Assembly: GCA_900088475.1 (NCBI GenBank)
Contig: FLMG01000094.1
Span: forward strand, 1-61,530
Reading direction: 5' to 3'
Length of the DNA: 61,530 nucleotides
Origin: Hyphochytrium catenoides
Taxonomy: Eukaryota; Protista; Hyphochytriomycota
The notes under the pieces were generated by a model. It was not told the DNA's origin, made no database searches, and saw only the letters and a program-made list of their open reading frames with translations. The position numbers were made by a program, and so were the translations under genes. Positions 21,410 through 28,868 of this stretch are shown piece by piece. The first letter of the stretch is position 1; every line of letters starts with the position of its first letter.

Positions 21410-21867
21410 GGTGCTGCCGCCTTTGAGAGAGGAGAGAAAGAGACAATGCTGCGGCTGCGCAGACGAAAGAGAAGATGCAGACTGGTTGAGGAGGAGAGTG
21501 GGAAAGAAGCCTTTGAGACAAGCGGGAGAGAGAGAGAGGAGAGAGGCGAGACGACAAAGATGTGAAGTGAGAGAGAGAGAAAAACACAAAGAGACAGTTA
21601 CCTCCCTGACCCTGCTGATGACCGCTGCGATTGACCAGATAGACCTTTACAAACCCCACCCAATAGTGGAGAAAGAGGGAAGAGAGAGACGGACCGAACC
21701 AAGTAAAGGAGGATAAAGAGGGTGCGAGGGAACGACCAGAAACCGAGAGAAAGAGAGTGAATGACAAATGCTCAGAGCGACACAACAGGAGAGAGAGGGG
21801 ACAGAGGACAAGAGATGTTGAGACAGAGAGGCACAAAGAAAGAGAGAAAGAGAGAGAGAGAGAGAGA

Positions 21868-21921
21868 NNNNNNNNNNNNNNNNNNNNNNNNNNNNNNNNN
21901 NNNNNNNNNNNNNNNNNNNNN
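21868..21921. other. Assembly gap inside a (GA)n tract
   Basis: 54 Ns flanked by GA repeats. Confidence 0.99.
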
Positions 21922-22265
21922 GAGAGAGAGAGAGAGAAGGAAAGAGAGGAATAAATTTTTGTCTGTGGTTAGAGGCGGAAAATGTTTCCCACACTCTCAG
22001 GGGTTCGCATCAGCCGCCCCTCTGCGGACTATCTATGGGTACGACATCCGCTAGGGATACTATCTCACTCCCCTTGGAGGAATATCTTTGGATAGAGGAA
22101 ACAAAAGACATCAAAAGCTGGTGACGGTAGGATTCTGAATGTACTTAGATAAGCGAGTGGTATTTAGGACGAGCATGGACATCGTGCCCACAGTACAGTA
22201 CTGTAAGCGGTTTGAGCGGTTCGTCTGACCTTTCACCCTGTCCCTCTCTCTTCTCTCTGTCTTCG

Positions 22266-22381
22266 TCTCTCTCTCTCTCTCTCTCTCTTTGTCTCGCTCT
22301 CGCTCTCTCTTTGTTTCTCTCTCTCTCTCTCTTTGTCTCGCTCTCTCTCTCTCTCTTTGTCTCGCTCTCTCTCTCTCTCTC
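22266..22381 (+). repeat. Compound minisatellite of (CT)n-TTGTCTCG units
   Basis: CTCTCTCTCTTTGTCTCG recurs three times, plus a variant. Confidence 0.85.
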
Positions 22382-22841
22382 CCCCTATGTCTCTCCTTTT
22401 ATCTTTCTGATGGATATTTCTCCCTCATATTCCCCGAAGCTTGCGCTTTCCGGCACCGTCTCCATCACTTGTGCAGTACATCATCGCAAGCTCCATTCTC
22501 CCGCCACTCGCATGCATCGTTGAGCTCCACATCAGCTCACATTTCCACCATCAATAACTTGCGTCCAGCACACCGACCTCTCTCTCTCCAATCTCCCTTT
22601 GTTCCTTCCTCTCTCTCTCATAAACCTAATCTTTATCAATCCAGGAAAGCCTCATAAACCTTTGTACCTCCTCTCTTGACTTTTCTTGGACCATCTCTCT
22701 CTCTCTCTCCTTCTGAAGCTTTGATCTCCAGACGTAGAGGTGGCCAGAGAAGGAGAAACCAAGCTATTCAATAAGAATTTGATAATATTGCCAACCAATA
22801 GTTCTTGATGTCTGCCTTCTCTCTCTCTCTCATGAAGAGTA

Positions 22842-25800
22842 TCACCTTTCTCTCCTGAGCAGCACCAGCGTGCTATTCAACGCGTGTACCTCGCCTTCCA
22901 GGTCCCGAACTCTCCTAGTAAGCCGCTGCACTGCGCCATGACGGTCTCCTCCACCAGCCACTGCGCGTCCAGCCACATAGCTCGCCCTCAGGTCTCCTCC
23001 CCCTGCTGCCTTGGCGCCCAATAGCCTTCGGTTCCGCCTCTGTGCCTCGCGTAGGCGAGACAGAGTGGCCGTGTTTCCATATCTTGCTTGGTTCGACTGA
23101 GAGAGCTCCAGGTTGTCCAGAAACAAGAGACACGCCGCCTTCACTAGATCTGCCCCCAGAAGGGCGAAAGAGAAGAGAACAGATCAAGGAGAACAGCAAA
23201 GGGTAAACGATGGGAGATGCCGTGAACGCCAGAGAGGGAAGAAGCTTACAACAAAGAATGCCACAAGGGATAAAGTGAAAGTTTATGAACTGGGACGGGA
23301 CGTCCAATACATGCTTCTCCTGGTCCGGGCCACATGAGTGCAAAGAACATAGAGAAAGGAGCAAAGGCTTGGGAGAGCACGAAAAGAGTGGGACAGGAAC
23401 AGAGAACAGAGAGACGGGGAAAGAGAAAATGTAGAGGTCACTGAGCCTAGCGCCCTTGACATCCCTTACCTCCAATAACAAACCAGAAGAGGCAATAGAC
23501 CAAGACAAACAGCACCATTAGACTGGACAAGTGCGGAGCAGGATGGAAGGGCCAAAAAACAGCGAATGCAGCGACAAGGAGCACACGAAGTGCAGTCACT
23601 CCTAACCCCAAGGCCCCAGGTCGTGGCGATAACATGAACAAACGCTCCTCCTTCGCAGAGTAGAAAGCTAAGGCGTCACTGACGCCAATCTGCAGGAACA
23701 TTAGGTTGAAGATCTGCCTATAGGCCAGCGGAGGAAGATGGAGCTGTCGAAAAGTGGACCGCGGATCATGCGAGGTTAACGCCCAGTGTAAGAGGAGTAG
23801 AGAAGAGACTACCAGAGAAGAAGAGAGAGAGAGAGAGGTCCATAATACTCTGCCAAAATCCCAAGTCTCTGGCCGTCTCCGGGCCCGGAACTTCTCTGCT
23901 GGCAGTCCCGAAGTAACGAAGAAGTGGAGTATGGTGACTATTATGAGAAACACTGTGGGCAAGCGGAAGGAGCTTGGAACCGGCTCTCCATGTCCTCCCT
24001 GGCTAGGACACATCCCGTTGACAGGCATAAACCCAGGATATCTGCAGCTGTCCGGGCGGACAAAGACGGTACCAATGAAGACAAACAGCAGCAGGCGGAG
24101 ACTGCAGGCCATCCTGTAGGTGATCGCACTGCGCATCCGCTGCACCACCTCCCGGGCAATTTTAATACCGCACACGAGAACAGAAAGGCCAGGCTTCGTC
24201 AGGACCACGTCAGCAGCACTTCTCGCTGCATCCACGGCCCCTTCCACTGCCACGCCAACAGTAGCCTTTCTAAGTAGTGGAATGTCACTGACAGACTCGC
24301 CTGTAGCCGATAACAAGCTGCCCCGGGACATCAGGACATCCGCAATGATTTGCTTCTGCTGAGGGTGGACTTGCGCGTAGGCATCAGCCGTCTCTAACAC
24401 CTCCGCGTAGTTGCTGGTGAGAGCCAGCTCACTTGGGACGAGTTGGTAGCTCCCCGCGGGCTCATCCTCATGGTCAGGGGCAGGAAGAACAGGAAGAGCG
24501 TTGGCCCCAATGACTGTGCTTCCTAGTCCGAGCTCACGGCAGACGTTAAGCGCATTAGCAGCTGTATCACCCGTCACAATTTTCACGTCAATGCCATGTG
24601 CCAACGCGTCGGCCACCGTGTCCTTAGCGTCATGCCTAAGGTTGTCTTTGAATGCAATGAGCCCCAAGAAGACCCAGAATCCATCTGCCCTACCATGATG
24701 GTGTGCCTGTTCTGCTGCTCCTGGGCCCGGTAAATGAGGCTGATGGCTGTCACTTTCGGAGAAAGCAGTGCGCGCAACAGCTAAGGACCGTAACCCTCTG
24801 CTTGCCAGCTCTAAGCAAGTGCTTTCGACTGCAGGGCGCAGGTCAACCGCGTTATGTGCAAGCTCTAGAACGGCTAAGGGACAGCCTTTGGTGGTCCGGA
24901 AGATGGCGCCGTTGGAAGCCCTTAATATGGCCTCTGAACGCCGTCTCTCTGCAGTGAATGCCTGGTAGTCCAGCTGCTCGTATTGGTCTAGCGGCCTTAG
25001 ATCAAGAGCGTTGAGACAAAGGACATCGATTGCATCTTTGGGAGGCTCTTTCCATTTTGACGCTAGCGCTGCCGCGACCAAGACGTCCTCTCTTGAGATA
25101 TTCTGTGCAAAGACAGAGATTTCTGACTGCATCTCAAGCTTGTTTCGTGTCAGCATTCCCGTCTTCTCTGTGAGTAGAAGGTTCACTCGAGCTAAAGCCT
25201 CAATAGCGCTAAAGCTGGTCACTACCACCTTCTCCTGGGCGAGCTGCTGAGATCCAATTCCAATGATAGTTTGGCAAGCCATTTGTAGGTTGATTGGGAT
25301 ACACGAGATGAGGATCACGGAGCAAATGATAGCTCCATGGGTAACAGAGTAGCCCTCAGCGAATAAGCGTCCTAGACAGAAGCCTAAGAGAAACAAAGAC
25401 AATACGAAGAGGTAGAGGAGCATTTGCATCACCACGGAGTGAGAAAGTCCTTTGTCTTCTAGCAAGTGAAGGCTCCGGACGCTCTGCCAGTAGAGAGTCC
25501 GAGAGCCTGTAGCCGTCACCACCGCTTCTGTCTCCCCTTTAATGACGAATCCCCCTGCCCTGACTGCATCACCTGTGCGGACTCTGACTCGCATACTGGG
25601 CCCAGTTAGAGAGCTCTCATCCACCACGACCTCCTTAGGGCCCACAATCATGCAGTCAGCCATCACGGCTGCTCCTGAAGGCAGCGAGACCCGGTCTCCA
25701 GGAACCAAGAGTGATGACTTGATTATCTGATAGACGCCATCGCGCTTAACTGATAAGGTTAACAAGAGGGCCAAACAATAGATTAAGCGATGAAAGAGCA

Positions 25801-26489
25801 ACCAACCAATGGACAAGCCCAAAAGGTGAGGGACACAGGGAAAAACGAGTACTCGGACGGCCTACTTTTTTGAGGTTAACGGACTAACCTTTGGCCTCGG
25901 GCGTTAGAGAGGATCGGAGCAGATTTGAAGCGATAGAGAGACGATTGCCCTCATTCCAGTTTATTGTCGCGTTAATTGCTTGGAGGAGGAGTAGCGCCAG
26001 AGCATCGGCCCATCTTGATTCCAAGCAACTGAGGATGAACCCTAGCCAGACCAACAGAGCTAATGGCCTGGTGAACTCTATGGCATAACCCCGCTGTAAG
26101 GACGGCAAGCGGATAAGATTGAGGCTTTGATCGATCAGCGTCAAGCTGAAAGTTGACAGCCTACCAGTCCGACTCCAGAAGCATCATGGAGGTCATTGCT
26201 GCCATACACAGCAAGGCGTTTAGCTGCCTCAACGCTGGATAATCCATTGTCAGGGGTTGGTGGAAGGTTATAATCAGGACCTTCCACACCAAAGTCCTTA
26301 CAGCCAAAGAGTTGTAAGACCAATCAGTCAAGCTATGAGGCAAAAGCACGATTATACCGATGAAGCGAAACTTACTTCTCCAAAGGTATAGGTCTGATGC
26401 TCGCGAATGCTCCCTGGTTGCTGGCCATTGCTGGAACGGGCAACTTCACTCCGTAAGAGAGACGTGTGCTCTTCTCCTTGCCTTGCCAT
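22842..26489 (-). CDS. P3A-type (plasma-membrane H+-ATPase family) protein with degenerate catalytic motifs, 5 exons, about 1,000 aa
   Basis: P3A scaffold: GLSSVEAAKRLAVYGSN, W.D...LLLLQAINATINWNE, VKRDG...LVPGD, AIEALA, KWKEPPKDAID, TKGCP, RGLRSLAVART, VKIVTGD, ATVGVAVEGAVDAARSAADVVLTKPGLS, YRMACSL, and a C-terminal coiled coil. Exon 1 is 26376-26489, the main exon is about 23470-25750, and the last exon (D|LVKAAC...) ends in TGA at 22842-22844. Confidence 0.9.
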
Positions 26490-27350
26490 GGCAGCCAGGT
26501 GCTACCCTACTATACAGCTAGTATATCAACTTTGGAAGGGCGACGAGTCTCTATGGTGGTGACGGCATACCACTCTCTAGCGTGGTAAGTAGATTTTGCT
26601 GGAACTTCTGACGCCCAATGAAAGTTGACTCCTCAAGAGTGCCTTATCCTTTGCTATGACAGCTGGCAGGGAGATGTTTGAATGGGAAGTAGCGACCTGC
26701 ACTCCTTCTGTTGGAGCATGGTGCATACTCACTTTCTCTTCAACTGCAGTTCATCGTTCTGCCGCTCTCATCTCTCATCAGCTGATGGCTTGCCTTCAAC
26801 TGAGCCTCTGAAGGTGATGATAGGCGTGTTCTTTCTACTCGTAGAGATCCGCCAAAGATTCACTCACTTGACCTGCTGCGAAACCCATAATCCATCATCG
26901 GGCAACCCATAATTCGCTGATTTTGCAAGTCCTTGGTAACCCATTATTCTGGGGCGTTGTGATTGGTCCTTTTGAGGCAAGAGTGAAGCAATCACCCAAT
27001 GAAAAGCCATCTTGATACTAAAGCGGGTCAAGGTTTGAAACTTGGGTATCTGCTAAAAGAGAGGACCCAGCTGAATATTTGATTATCGCCTTTAGGATGT
27101 TAAGGATAATCACGAATCTGATCTGTCAAGTTAATTTGTCAGAAGCGGTGATGAGCTTCTTGCCCAACCATTCGCCCTTGTCAACAGAAACGGAAAGCCG
27201 TCATCAGAGCTCTACAAAGAAAGCTCTGGTTGGATGCAGCTCTCTTTCTATCTATGAAGTGAAGTCTGGCTGGTCCTGCGCAGAGACATTGGCACAATCC
27301 GGACAGAATATCTGATAGACTGAGATATCTGCCTGAGCTCTATAGTGAGA
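26490..27350. promoter_or_regulatory. Putative bidirectional promoter between the divergent P3A-like gene and BRX1
   Basis: Head-to-head ATGs about 860 bp apart. CCAAT/ATTGG boxes lie near 26614, 26962 and 26996. Confidence 0.4.
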
Positions 27351-28868
27351 ATGGTGGCCAAGCCTTCCAGCAAGAAGCGTGCGGCACCAGCAGCGAAAGA
27401 AGCTGTAAAAGTATCCGACGAAAAGAGAGCTAGGTTGGAGGATGGTGCGCCAGGGCAGCCAGACGCAGATCAAGAGATGGAAAACTTAGTTTATGATGGA
27501 ACATACAAGAACAAACAGCGAGTGTTGGTCCTCTGCTCTCGGGGTATAGTCTCCCGCCATCGCCACTTTATGGAGGATATCAAACTTCTCTTGCCACATC
27601 ATAAGAAGGAGAACAAGTTTGACTCCAAGGGCACGCTCCAGGTTATCAACGACATAGCAGAGATGAAAGGATGTAATAACTGCATCTATCTGGAGACCAG
27701 AAAACGACAGGACCTGTACATGTGGATCAGCCGCACGCCTAATGGTCCTTCTGCCAAATTCCGAGTCCTGAATGGTACGCCTAAAGTGATGTCTTACGTG
27801 AGAGCGTGCCTCAACCTTATCTTCTTTGCTCTCGCCTCACACTTGCCAGTGCATACGATGGATGAGCTCAAACTCACTGGGAATGCCATGAGAGGCTCTC
27901 GGCCTCTACTATCCTTTGACACAGCCTTCGATAGCCAGCCCTATTTGAAGCTTATCAAAGGCATGTTTGTACAGGTAAAGCATAGATGATGGGCTGACAC
28001 TTGGCTACTAGGGCCCTCGCTCATTCTCCTACCCTAGGTCTGGGGAACACCGCGGGGCCACCCTAAGAGCAAACCATTCATTGACAGAATGATGTCCTTC
28101 TGCTTTTTGGATAACAAGATCTGGGTTAGGAACTGGCAGGTGAGACGCATTCGCAGAGGCTTTCAGACAAGAAGAGCGAGGGGAGAGATACTGTTGGGAA
28201 TCCTAGGCATGTGAGAGGATCAAGTCTCTTAACCCTGAGCAGAAGGAGCCAGGAGCGACAAGGAGTACATCAGCAACATCCTTCACTGCTGGCCAAAGAT
28301 ATATATTGTGGAGATGGGGAGATAGGGGAGTCTCTGTGGATGCAGACTTAACTGTGCCAGAAAGTAATACTGCTGCTTCCTCTTCTCAGATCATTGATGA
28401 AGGGGGAAACAGAAAGGAGGAGCTGGTTGCGGCACACAAGGGCGAAGATCTTACACAGCTTGTAGAGATTGGGCCACGCTTCGTCCTGGACCCGATCAGA
28501 ATTTTTGACGGCAGCTTTGGCGGTGCAACGCTGTATCAAAGCCCAAGCTATGTGTCTCCTAATGAGGTTAGTCTGCTTTGAGCTTTTACTTGGTGCTTCC
28601 TGCTTTCTTCTTTTTTTTTGACTTGAGACCATCAACAAGCTGTGTTCCCTCTCATCGTTATTCATGAACTTCCGTCTGTTTTTCTTTGGCGGACCTATCA
28701 TGGGGCATGTCACTGATATTGTGGTGGCTGCAGTTGCGACGAGAGCAGCACACAAAGCATCACAACAAGTATGCGAACAGAGTGGCAGCCAGACAAGCCG
28801 CCCAGCAGCGGAAGGCTGAGAATGTTATGCCTAAGGATGAGCTAGAGGATGTATTTAAAGCTGAATAG
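27351..28868 (+). CDS. BRX1: Ribosome biogenesis protein BRX1 (Brix domain), 5 exons
   Basis: KNKQRVLVLCSRG...RHRHFMEDI...LLPHHKKE.KFD...YLETRKRQDLYMW...NGPSAKF...VHTMDELKLTGN..RGSRPLLSFD...GTPRGHPKSKPFIDR...LVEIGPRFVL.PIRIFDGSFGGATLY. Confidence 0.97.

What the first reader, a model, noticed from the sequence alone, without database searches (positions are those of the whole stretch)
22842..26489. Intact P3A ATPase gene with its key catalytic motifs replaced: a candidate P-type pseudo-pump
Seen: the phosphorylation motif reads LTEKTGMLT (Glu codon GAG at 25166-25168) instead of CSDKTGTLT. The actuator TGES is TGPS (25595-25606), the hinge TGDGVND is TGESVSD (24284-24304), DPPR is DNLR, M4 PIA is PIN, and M6 (IIVTILHFFVT) lacks the proton-acceptor Asp of the ...LNDG motif. 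The frame is open for about 1,000 codons with normal introns, and the fold, nucleotide-binding KGxP, TGD and membrane helices are kept. Established: the DKTGT Asp is the obligatory phospho-acceptor of P-type ATPases, the TGES Glu drives dephosphorylation, and the M6 Asp (D684 in AHA2) is needed for H+ transport. Inference: this many independent losses without stops or frameshifts fits a maintained pseudoenzyme better than sequencing error. Possible roles are a regulator or hetero-oligomer partner of an active H+-pump, a nucleotide sensor, a scaffold or a passive conduit.
Basis: partly seen in the sequence, partly recalled or inferred. Interest (0 to 1): 0.85.

Follow-up and report, generated by a model that had tools for sequence, protein, structure and literature searches.

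The report
Proton-pump gene with dead catalytic site
This intact five-exon gene encodes a relative of the plasma-membrane proton pump that has lost the residues needed to use ATP and carry protons, yet natural selection still keeps it, so it probably makes a pump-shaped protein with a non-pumping job that is still unknown.

Summary
A minus-strand gene (22842-26489; 5 exons, GT..AG introns, 1012 aa) belongs by descent and by predicted fold to the P3A H+-ATPases. K438, the TGD motif, K616 and the second hinge Asp are kept.

Contigs from two DNA runs of the same organism show the same codons. No RNA run was listed, so transcription is untested.

Selection is visible:
- Neutral drift to even 90% identity closes the frame in over 99% of simulations, and the protein is only about 42% identical to its nearest kin.
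- Allelic differences give 17 synonymous to 14 non-synonymous changes (pN/pS about 0.28, p about 0.001).
- Every well-supported indel lies in an intron or the 5' flank.

The gene belongs to the oomycete-type pump subfamily. It shares that subfamily's Cys-rich outer loop and C-terminal tail. Its nucleotide-binding domain is the best-kept part and its membrane domain the most decayed.

No orthologue with the same losses was found, and its relationship to other degenerate oomycete proteins is unresolved.

Best reading (about 0.68): a maintained, catalytically dead pseudo-pump. Its actual role is inferred, not shown.

The scan has not reported this on other DNA. It did note a dead ABCC ATPase in the same genome.

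The parts
22842..26489 (-). Whole gene: 5 exons, 1012-aa P3A-type ATPase homologue
   Evidence: Gene model and translation. Pfam E1-E2_ATPase and Cation_ATPase_N. Best PDB sequence matches are Pma1 and AHA2, E about 1e-72.
26376..26489 (-). Exon 1 (Met1-Glu38), N-terminal tail
   Evidence: ATG at 26489 and GTAAGT donor at 26375.
26165..26296 (-). Exon 2 (residues 39-82), Cation_ATPase_N segment
   Evidence: Pfam PF00690, E 1.4e-6. Phase-0 junctions.
25889..26093 (-). Exon 3 (residues 83-151, first base of codon 151), helices M1-M2
   Evidence: Aligns to M1-M2 of homologues. The junction gives ...PEAK|VKRDG, as in relatives.
23470..25749 (-). Exon 4 (residues 151-911): A, P and N domains and M3-M10
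   Evidence: 791-aa ORF. AF2 model pLDDT 84.7, pTM 0.79. Foldseek TM 0.80-0.81 to Pma1 7nxf and AHA2 5ksd.
22842..23149 (-). Exon 5 (residues 911-1012 and stop): end of M10 and the C-terminal tail. It holds the subfamily motifs QRRNRRL (23022-23042) and SYVAGRA (22962-22982).
   Evidence: The tail motifs are shared with canonical oomycete pumps (QRQNRIR, SFVAGRA).
25595..25606 (-). Actuator motif TGPS in place of TGES (Pro201)
   Evidence: Unchanged in the X1 contig.
25286..25297 (-). M4 motif PINL in place of PIAM (Asn304)
25148..25174 (-). Phosphorylation motif LTEKTGMLT in place of CSDKTGTLT (Glu345, Met349)
   Evidence: Unchanged in the X1, X2 and X3 contigs.
24980..25090 (-). Best-conserved stretch of the protein (residues 371-407, start of the N domain)
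   Evidence: 77-80% identical to the canonical oomycete consensus in 30-residue windows. The whole N domain keeps 72% of columns that are invariant in 9 canonical oomycete pumps, against 34-44% in the membrane helices.
24878..24889 (-). Nucleotide-site motif KGCP (Lys438 kept)
24680..24760 (-). Gene-specific insertion in the N domain (residues 481-507), predicted disordered
   Evidence: Gap in all homologues. pLDDT under 50. It holds 3 of the 14 non-synonymous allelic differences.
24635..24646 (-). DNLR in place of DPPR (Asp519 kept)
24563..24577 (-). VTGDT: the TGD motif is kept (Asp545)
24284..24304 (-). Hinge TGESVSD in place of TGDGVND (Glu635, Ser638; Asp639 kept)
   Evidence: Unchanged in the X1 and X2 contigs.
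24005..24058 (-). Cys-containing M5-M6 outer loop typical of the oomycete-type subfamily
   Evidence: Shared with P0001, P0005 and P0007 and absent from plant and bacterial P3A.
23912..23944 (-). M6 helix IIVTILHFFVT: His759-Phe760 in place of the Asn-Asp proton site

Best explanation
The gene encodes a pump-shaped protein descended from the oomycete-type plasma-membrane H+-ATPase (P3A). It can no longer run the P-type cycle. It lacks the aspartyl-phosphate acceptor (Asp to Glu345), the dephosphorylating Glu (Pro201), the Mg-binding hinge Asp (Glu635) and the M6 proton-binding Asn-Asp (His-Phe). It is nevertheless kept by purifying selection, which makes it a pseudoenzyme, a 'pseudo-pump'.

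Shown here: the descent, the fold, the residue losses, the open frame, and the signature of selection.

Inferred: the protein still folds in the membrane. It probably still binds nucleotide, because the N domain and its Lys438, Phe and Arg positions are the best-kept part. It also keeps the subfamily's C-terminal regulatory tail. It would therefore act through binding rather than transport. The likeliest role is as a regulator or partner of active pumps, since P3A pumps are known to form hexamers, or as a nucleotide-responsive membrane scaffold. Which of these holds is not known.
For: Descent and fold:
- Best PDB sequence hits are Pma1 and AHA2.
- The best NCBIfam model is TIGR01647.
- The gene falls in a 100/100 clade with oomycete pumps.
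- The AF2 model has pLDDT 84.7 and TM 0.80-0.81 to 7nxf and 5ksd.

Residue losses.

Reads: X1 and X2 contigs show the same motif codons, with every difference accounted for.

Selection:
- Simulated neutral drift gives a mean of 27 stop codons at the observed 42% identity.
- 0 of 300 simulated frames stay open at 80% identity, and 0.7% at 90%.
- Allelic differences are 17 synonymous to 14 non-synonymous over 763 and 2273 sites, giving pN/pS about 0.28 and a binomial p about 0.001.
- The four indel places carried by well-covered contigs lie in introns 1-3 and the 5' flank. The only coding indel is in a contig of depth 2.5.
- One 160-nt intron-4 piece differs at 10 places (about 6%), against roughly 1-1.7% in the coding sequence.

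Uneven conservation: the N domain keeps 72% of subfamily-invariant columns and the C-tail 62%, against 34-44% for M3-M10.

Precedent that Asp to Glu at this site is not tolerated: the Toxoplasma P4-GC substitution, as cited in PMC13466520.
Against: - No RNA run was listed for this gene, so neither transcription nor the splice model is confirmed by reads.
- No close orthologue exists in the databases searched. The best hit is 42% identical, so long-term retention of these particular losses cannot be shown.
- Only 40 of 70 read differences were listed, so pN/pS rests on 31 coding sites. A value of 0.28 is only moderate constraint.
- The DNA runs are probably the assembly's own source.
- The branch is about ten times longer than those of canonical pumps, which also fits strongly relaxed constraint.
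- Nucleotide binding, partners and location are all untested.
Confidence: 0.68

Rival explanations
1. A gene on its way out. It was functional and fast-evolving for a long time, but it is now silent or useless, and disabling mutations have not yet arrived.
For: No RNA run was listed. The terminal branch is very long, 1.8-1.9 changes per site. Only 61% of family-invariant columns are kept. No orthologue shares the losses.
Against: Present-day alleles still show an excess of synonymous change (pN/pS about 0.28, p about 0.001). Indels are confined to non-coding DNA. Both haplotype-like contig sets keep the frame open. Conservation is patterned by domain rather than uniform.
Confidence: 0.14
2. 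Still an active ATPase or transporter that uses unusual chemistry, for example a glutamyl-phosphate at Glu345 with Glu635 in the Mg site. It would move something other than protons.
For: Both key Asp residues are replaced by Glu, which keeps the charge. Lys438, TGD, Lys616, Asp519 and Asp639 are kept, and the N domain is well conserved. Two other family members also have Glu at the phosphorylation site (P0184, P0249).
Against: The TGES Glu needed for dephosphorylation is Pro. The second Thr of DKTGT is Met, DPPR is DNLR, and the hinge Asn is Ser, so several parts of the site are hit at once. Asp to Glu at this position is reported as non-viable in a P4-ATPase module (PMC13466520). It is inactivating in SERCA and Pma1 by my own knowledge, which I did not check here. 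The membrane ion site is the least conserved part.
Confidence: 0.1
3. An artefact of assembly or of my gene model, such as a chimeric or mis-spliced frame.
For: The splice sites are inferred from sequence and homology only. The window carries an N gap about 900 bases downstream of the gene.
Against: All critical motifs lie in one uninterrupted 2280-nt exon. Contigs from three runs cover them with only scattered substitutions. Exon junctions align cleanly to homologues.
Confidence: 0.03

Closest known systems
Oomycete-type plasma-membrane H+-ATPases (P3A), e.g. Globisporangium polare P0005, Albugo laibachii F0W1W3 (P0299), Peronospora effusa P0301
   Same: Nearest relatives at 40-43% identity, in a 100/100 clade. 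They share the 10-helix architecture, the Cys-rich M5-M6 outer loop and the C-terminal tail motifs QRxNR and SFVAGRA.
   Different: They keep all catalytic and proton-site motifs and all 132 family-invariant columns. This gene keeps 80 of 132 and lacks the phospho-Asp, the TGES Glu, the first hinge Asp and the M6 Asn-Asp.
Fungal Pma1 and plant AHA2 (solved structures 7nxf, 7vh5, 5ksd)
   Same: Same predicted fold (TM 0.80-0.81) and the best sequence matches among solved structures.
   Different: 26-28% identity. Those are active, phosphoenzyme-forming proton pumps, and this protein lacks the residues for that.
Divergent oomycete relatives: Pythium insidiosum GLD93772.1 (P0017), UniParc UPI00043FE040 (P0020), Aphanomyces astaci XP_009843977.1 (P0272), A. 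euteiches (P0286), A. stellatus (P0308)
   Same: Same subfamily, long branches, below the TIGR01647 cut-off, degenerate hinge. P0017 and P0020 also have an M6 without the Asp. Some replacements are identical to this gene's: hinge Asn to Ser, Ala to Ile, PEHK Glu to Gln, Lys to Arg.
   Different: All keep the phospho-Asp, and most keep the TGES Glu. Common origin with this gene is not resolved: support is 61/95, then 37/38 with more taxa, and the alternative placement has p-AU 0.46-0.54. The Aphanomyces proteins group with the Saprolegnia and Achlya pumps, so they are lineage orthologues and not a separate paralogue clade.
P4-ATPase module of the flippase-guanylate cyclase chimeras (P4GC) of alveolates
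   Same: A P-type ATPase module that has lost the DKTGT Asp and the A-domain Glu in some lineages and is still retained and needed (PMC13466520).
   Different: Different subfamily (P4, lipid flippases). That module is fused to a cyclase which gives it an evident role. This is a stand-alone P3A protein with no added domain.
Pseudoenzymes in general (pseudokinases, pseudophosphatases)
   Same: Enzyme fold kept, catalytic residues lost, gene kept by selection. Ligand-binding parts are often preserved.
   Different: I found no described case in the P3A proton-pump family. The library searched is not complete.

Membership tests
P3A plasma-membrane H+-ATPase (by descent) | Falls inside the P3A clade in a phylogeny | tested here: met
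   100/100 clade with oomycete P3A pumps. Plant and bacterial P3A lie outside it.
P3A plasma-membrane H+-ATPase (by descent) | P-type fold with A, P and N domains and a 10-helix membrane domain | tested here: met
   AF2 model of residues 152-910 has pLDDT 84.7. TM is 0.80-0.81 to Pma1 and AHA2. M1-M2 align to homologues but were not modelled.
P3A plasma-membrane H+-ATPase (functional equivalog, TIGR01647) | Score at or above the curated cut-off of 615.5 bits | tested here: not met
   489 bits for exon 4, which lacks the first 96 profile positions. Full-length degenerate relatives score 573 and 576, and a canonical pump scores 992.
P-type ATPase (catalytic) | Asp in DKTGT as phospho-acceptor | tested here: not met
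   Glu345, codon GAG at 25166-25168. D is found in 142 of 149 representatives.
P-type ATPase (catalytic) | Glu of the A-domain TGES motif | tested here: not met
   Pro201.
P-type ATPase (catalytic) | GDGxND hinge, with the Mg-binding Asp and the Asn | tested here: not met
   The motif reads GESVSD. The first Asp is Glu635, the Asn is Ser638, and the last Asp639 is kept.
P-type ATPase (catalytic) | Nucleotide- and phosphate-site residues KGxP Lys, TGD and the PxxK Lys | tested here: met
   Lys438, Thr-Gly-Asp543-545 and Lys616 are all present.
P3A proton transport | M6 Asn-Asp proton site (Asp684 in AHA2) and the M4 PIA motif | tested here: not met
   M6 has His759-Phe760 and M4 has PINL.
Pseudoenzyme | Homology to an enzyme family with the catalytic residues lost | tested here: met
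Pseudoenzyme | Retention by purifying selection | tested here: met
   Open frame against neutral simulation, pN/pS about 0.28, and indels only in non-coding DNA. This is within-organism evidence only.
Pseudoenzyme | The gene is expressed as a protein | tested here: inconclusive
   No RNA run was listed for the gene.
Pseudoenzyme | Shown to lack catalytic activity | not testable with these tools
   Needs phosphoenzyme and ATPase assays.

The most novel reading that the evidence does not exclude
Dead P3A proton pumps may be a recurrent class of membrane pseudoenzymes that has gone unrecognised. Among 150 representatives of the nearest P3A proteins, about 13 have lost the phospho-Asp, the TGES Glu or the hinge Asp. 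They sit in at least ten separate places in the tree, each beside active pumps. They include a euglenid transcript, a basidiomycete gene and a three-member clade that is entirely degenerate. In this reading the present gene is the most complete example. It would keep its nucleotide-binding domain and regulatory tail so that it can sense ATP, or bind the pump's regulators, and so tune active pumps in mixed oligomers.
Probability: 0.3. Interest if true: 0.75.

Novelty: new variant of a known kind. Interest (0 to 1): 0.6.

Why it matters
P-type ATPases are textbook examples of a strictly conserved catalytic cycle. The recent review I checked (PMC10654040) has no text on non-catalytic members.

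A stand-alone proton-pump homologue that has lost the cycle but is still under selection would show that this fold can be reused for something other than transport. It would give a natural 'locked' P3A protein for structural and regulatory studies. It would also warn annotators that the label 'plasma-membrane proton-efflux ATPase' is being applied to proteins that cannot pump; the Aphanomyces astaci relative carries that name.

It also bears on how this relative of the oomycetes energises its membrane. Earlier notes from this scan, which I did not check, report Na,K-ATPase-like pumps in the same genome.

Tried and rejected
- **RNA evidence.** The RNA search listed no run. The second search returned only DNA-type runs. 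The one reads call therefore shows DNA only.
- **Closer orthologues.** Two word-indexed searches and one exhaustive profile search found nothing closer than 42% identity. A between-species dN/dS for this gene could not be computed.
- **Orthology with the degenerate oomycete proteins.** A first tree joined them (96 SH-aLRT; 61/95). Support fell to 37/38 with more taxa. A tree with this gene as sister to all oomycete sequences is equally good (p-AU 0.46 and 0.54). I therefore dropped the claim of an ancient shared pseudo-pump clade.
- **dN/dS between Aphanomyces astaci and A. euteiches.** dN is 0.27 but dS is saturated, so only 'well below 1' can be said.
- **An active paralogue in this genome.** A look-up of the scan's notes by sequence and by words found nothing. 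The origin of the canonical Logan proteins P0007 and P0269 (run SRR26183987) could not be determined.
- **Synteny.** The neighbours differ: a Brix-like ORF here, a CFAP65-like gene in Aphanomyces, VPS9 and a kinase in Pythium.
- **Full-length structure.** Not modelled, because the spliced protein has no reference. Only exon 4 was folded.
- **Sequencing error or a neutral pseudogene.** Rejected.
Full report
**What is there**

The minus strand of 22842-26489 carries a five-exon gene. I spliced exons 26489-26376, 26296-26165, 26093-25889, 25749-23470 and 23149-22842. This gives a 3039-nt frame, 1012 residues plus stop. The four introns are 79, 71, 139 and 320 nt, and all are GT..AG. The spliced junctions read through smoothly in alignment with homologues; for example, the exon 3/4 junction reads ...LTPEAK|VKRDG. 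All catalytic motifs lie in the single 2280-nt exon 4, which also appears as a 791-aa ORF. ORFs on the other strand are short and unremarkable. Below, WIN means this window's protein.

**Family**

- Pfam finds E1-E2_ATPase and Cation_ATPase_N.
- The best solved-structure sequence matches are yeast and Neurospora Pma1 and Arabidopsis AHA2, with E about 1e-72. MgtA and the P2 pumps score far lower.
- The best NCBIfam model is TIGR01647 (plasma-membrane proton-efflux ATPase). It scores 489 bits for exon 4, below the 615.5 cut-off. A canonical oomycete pump scores 992.
- An AlphaFold2 model of exon 4, built with a 30-sequence alignment, is confident (pLDDT 84.7, pTM 0.79). Only two gene-specific loops are disordered.
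- Foldseek ranks Pma1 (7nxf, TM 0.80) and AHA2 (5ksd, TM 0.81) first.

**The motif losses are real**

HMMER alignments to Pma1 and multiple alignments show these changes:

| Canonical motif | Here | Key residue |
|---|---|---|
| TGES | TGPS | Pro201 |
| PIAM (M4) | PINL | Asn304 |
| CSDKTGTLT | LTEKTGMLT | Glu345, Met349 |
| DPPR | DNLR | Asn520, Leu521 |
| TGDGVND | TGESVSD | Glu635, Ser638 |
| M6 Asn-Asp | His-Phe | His759, Phe760 |

Kept are the KGxP Lys438, the DPPR Asp519, the TGD motif, the PxxK Lys616 and the last hinge Asp639.

Across 150 representatives of the closest P3A proteins these columns are nearly fixed. The phospho-Asp is D in 142 of 149, the TGES Glu is E in 130 of 134, the first hinge Asp is D in 137 of 148, and the M6 Asp is D in 119 of 138. 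Of 132 columns that are near-invariant in 25 canonical pumps, this protein keeps 80, while canonical pumps keep 128-132.

**Reads**

No RNA run was listed. Three DNA-type runs of one organism hold the gene. Laid on 22700-26600, their contigs differ from the window by scattered substitutions. For the long contigs, every difference is in the listed table:

- X2 over 23970-25599: 12 differences.
- X1 over 23970-24616: 4 differences.
- X1 over 24626-26600: 14 differences.

None touches a motif codon. The nearest, at 25169, is a synonymous change in Thr344. Pairs of overlapping contigs with 0 against 4, or 0 against 10, differences indicate two haplotypes. These runs may be the assembly's own source, so they exclude an assembly slip but are not an independent isolate.

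**Selection**

1. I simulated neutral substitution on this coding sequence. At the observed 42% identity the frame collects a mean of 27 stops (minimum 15). No frame in 300 stays open at 80% identity, and 0.7% stay open at 90%. The frame has therefore been protected for almost all of its divergence.
2. Of the 31 listed allelic differences in the coding sequence, 17 are synonymous and 14 are not. The sites number 763 synonymous and 2273 non-synonymous, giving pN/pS about 0.28. The binomial p is about 0.001 against a neutral non-synonymous share of 0.72. Only 40 of 70 differences were listed, so this is a sample.
3. The four indel places carried by well-covered contigs fall in introns 1, 2 and 3 and the 5' flank. 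The only coding indel is in a contig of depth 2.5.
4. One intron-4 piece differs at 10 of 160 places. The coding sequence differs at about 1-1.7%.

**Where it belongs**

The nearest proteins are oomycete P3A pumps at 40-43% identity, with all motifs intact. In trees the gene sits in a 100/100 clade with them. It shares their Cys-containing M5-M6 outer loop and their C-terminal tail; QRRNRRL and SYVAGRA here match QRQNRIR and SFVAGRA there.

Earlier notes of this scan describe the genome as an intron-rich close relative of the oomycetes with kalium channelrhodopsins. From this I infer, without proof, Hyphochytrium catenoides. Its genome paper reports a diploid with about 2.75% SNPs and a cDNA data set (PMC5795050).

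**Degenerate relatives**

Several oomycete proteins of the same subfamily are also degenerate:

| Protein | Motif states |
|---|---|
| Pythium insidiosum GLD93772.1 (P0017) | AGES; hinge TADSVSD; M6 LLHGV |
| UniParc UPI00043FE040 (P0020) | VGAS; hinge TGSTISD |
| Three Aphanomyces species | TGET; broken hinge |
| Saprolegnia and Achlya | Hinge altered only mildly |

All of them keep the phospho-Asp.

A first tree joined this gene to them. Support was 61/95 in a careful tree and fell to 37/38 with more taxa. Placing the gene as sister to all oomycete sequences, as the species tree would predict, is equally good (p-AU 0.46 and 0.54). So I cannot say whether the gene shares an old degenerate ancestor with P0017 and P0020 or decayed on its own.

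The Aphanomyces genes are intronless and share a CFAP65-like neighbour. They differ by dN 0.27 with saturated dS. At least that lineage's altered pump is clearly maintained.

**Pattern of conservation**

Measured against the consensus of nine canonical oomycete pumps, conservation varies by domain:

| Region | Identity to consensus | Share of subfamily-invariant columns kept |
|---|---|---|
| N (nucleotide-binding) domain | 58% | 72% |
| C-terminal tail | 28% | 62% |
| M3-M4 | 31% | 34% |
| M5-M10 | 33-35% | 42-44% |

The best-kept windows are residues 371-410 (77-80% identical). The cytosolic nucleotide-binding part and the tail are kept, and the ion pathway is let go. This is why I favour a binding or regulatory role over any transport role.

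**Mechanism, with what is shown and what is inferred**

Shown: a P3A-derived fold, loss of the residues for phosphorylation, dephosphorylation, Mg binding and proton binding, and purifying selection.

Established knowledge: the DKTGT Asp is the obligatory phospho-acceptor and the TGES Glu drives dephosphorylation (PMC10654040). Asp to Glu at this site was non-viable in the Toxoplasma P4-GC (PMC13466520).

Inferred: the protein does not cycle or pump. It may still bind ATP, and it acts by association. P3A pumps form hexamers (entry titles 7vh5 and 7vh6), so incorporation into, or regulation of, active-pump assemblies is the most natural model. A nucleotide-responsive scaffold is the alternative. 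I put the maintained dead-pump reading at about 0.68, and any one specific role much lower.

**Known or new**

Searches for P-type ATPase pseudoenzymes, inactive paralogues and oomycete PMA1 found no description of a dead P3A pump. The closest precedent is the P4-ATPase module of the flippase-cyclase chimeras, where the Asp and Glu are lost in some lineages.

The phenomenon is wider than this gene. About 13 of the 150 representatives have lost one or more of the key residues, and seven have lost the phospho-Asp itself, two of them to Glu. In a FastTree these need at least ten separate origins. They include an Entosiphon transcript and a basidiomycete gene.

I therefore rate the finding as a new variant of a known kind (pseudoenzymes, here in the proton-pump family), with moderate to high interest.

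Noticed in passing
proteins P0139, P0147, P0184, P0189, P0199, P0215, P0226, P0232, P0235, P0243, P0247, P0249 (no window coordinates): About 13 of 150 P3A representatives carry degenerate DKTGT, TGES or hinge motifs. They lie in at least ten separate tree positions, each next to canonical pumps. P0215 is an Entosiphon sulcatum transcript. P0249 is an Artomyces pyxidatus (basidiomycete) gene reading AEKTGTLT. P0147, P0189 and P0226 form an all-degenerate clade.
   Followed up: partly
L002:1501-4407 (Aphanomyces astaci), L003:1501-4254 (A. euteiches): Intronless genes that share a CFAP65-like neighbour. They encode pumps with TGET, DKTGS and a broken hinge (TGLG-D and TGH-TE), yet the A. astaci protein is annotated as a 'plasma-membrane proton-efflux P-type ATPase'. 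dN is 0.27 with saturated dS, so the gene is conserved.
   Followed up: partly
window 23183-23342 and 23886-23999: Pairs of overlapping read contigs with 0 against 10 and 0 against 4 differences indicate two haplotypes. Intron 4 differs by about 6% between them. This fits the highly heterozygous diploid described for Hyphochytrium catenoides, which is my inference for the organism.
   Followed up: partly
window 23996-24146: A freshwater-sediment metagenome run (X4) holds a 151-nt contig of this gene with one difference. The organism, or a very close relative, therefore occurs in that environment.
   Followed up: no
window 27345-27989 (+): An ORF that looks, from its sequence alone, like a Brix-type ribosome-biogenesis protein. 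It is transcribed divergently from the pump gene, about 855 bases upstream of its ATG. Not scanned against Pfam.
   Followed up: no
window 21760-22800: GA/TC-rich microsatellite-like DNA and a run of N (translated as X in ORF 21761-22054) lie downstream of the gene's stop. This is an assembly gap close to the 3' end.
   Followed up: no
window 24353-24367 and M5 around 24090-24130: At the M5 position where the canonical pumps of the oomycete-type clade and its nearest protist relatives have Gln (ACTIQLL) and plant pumps have the conserved Arg, this protein has Arg (ACSLRLL). Its PEHK motif reads PQQK, as in the Pythium insidiosum relative.
   Followed up: no
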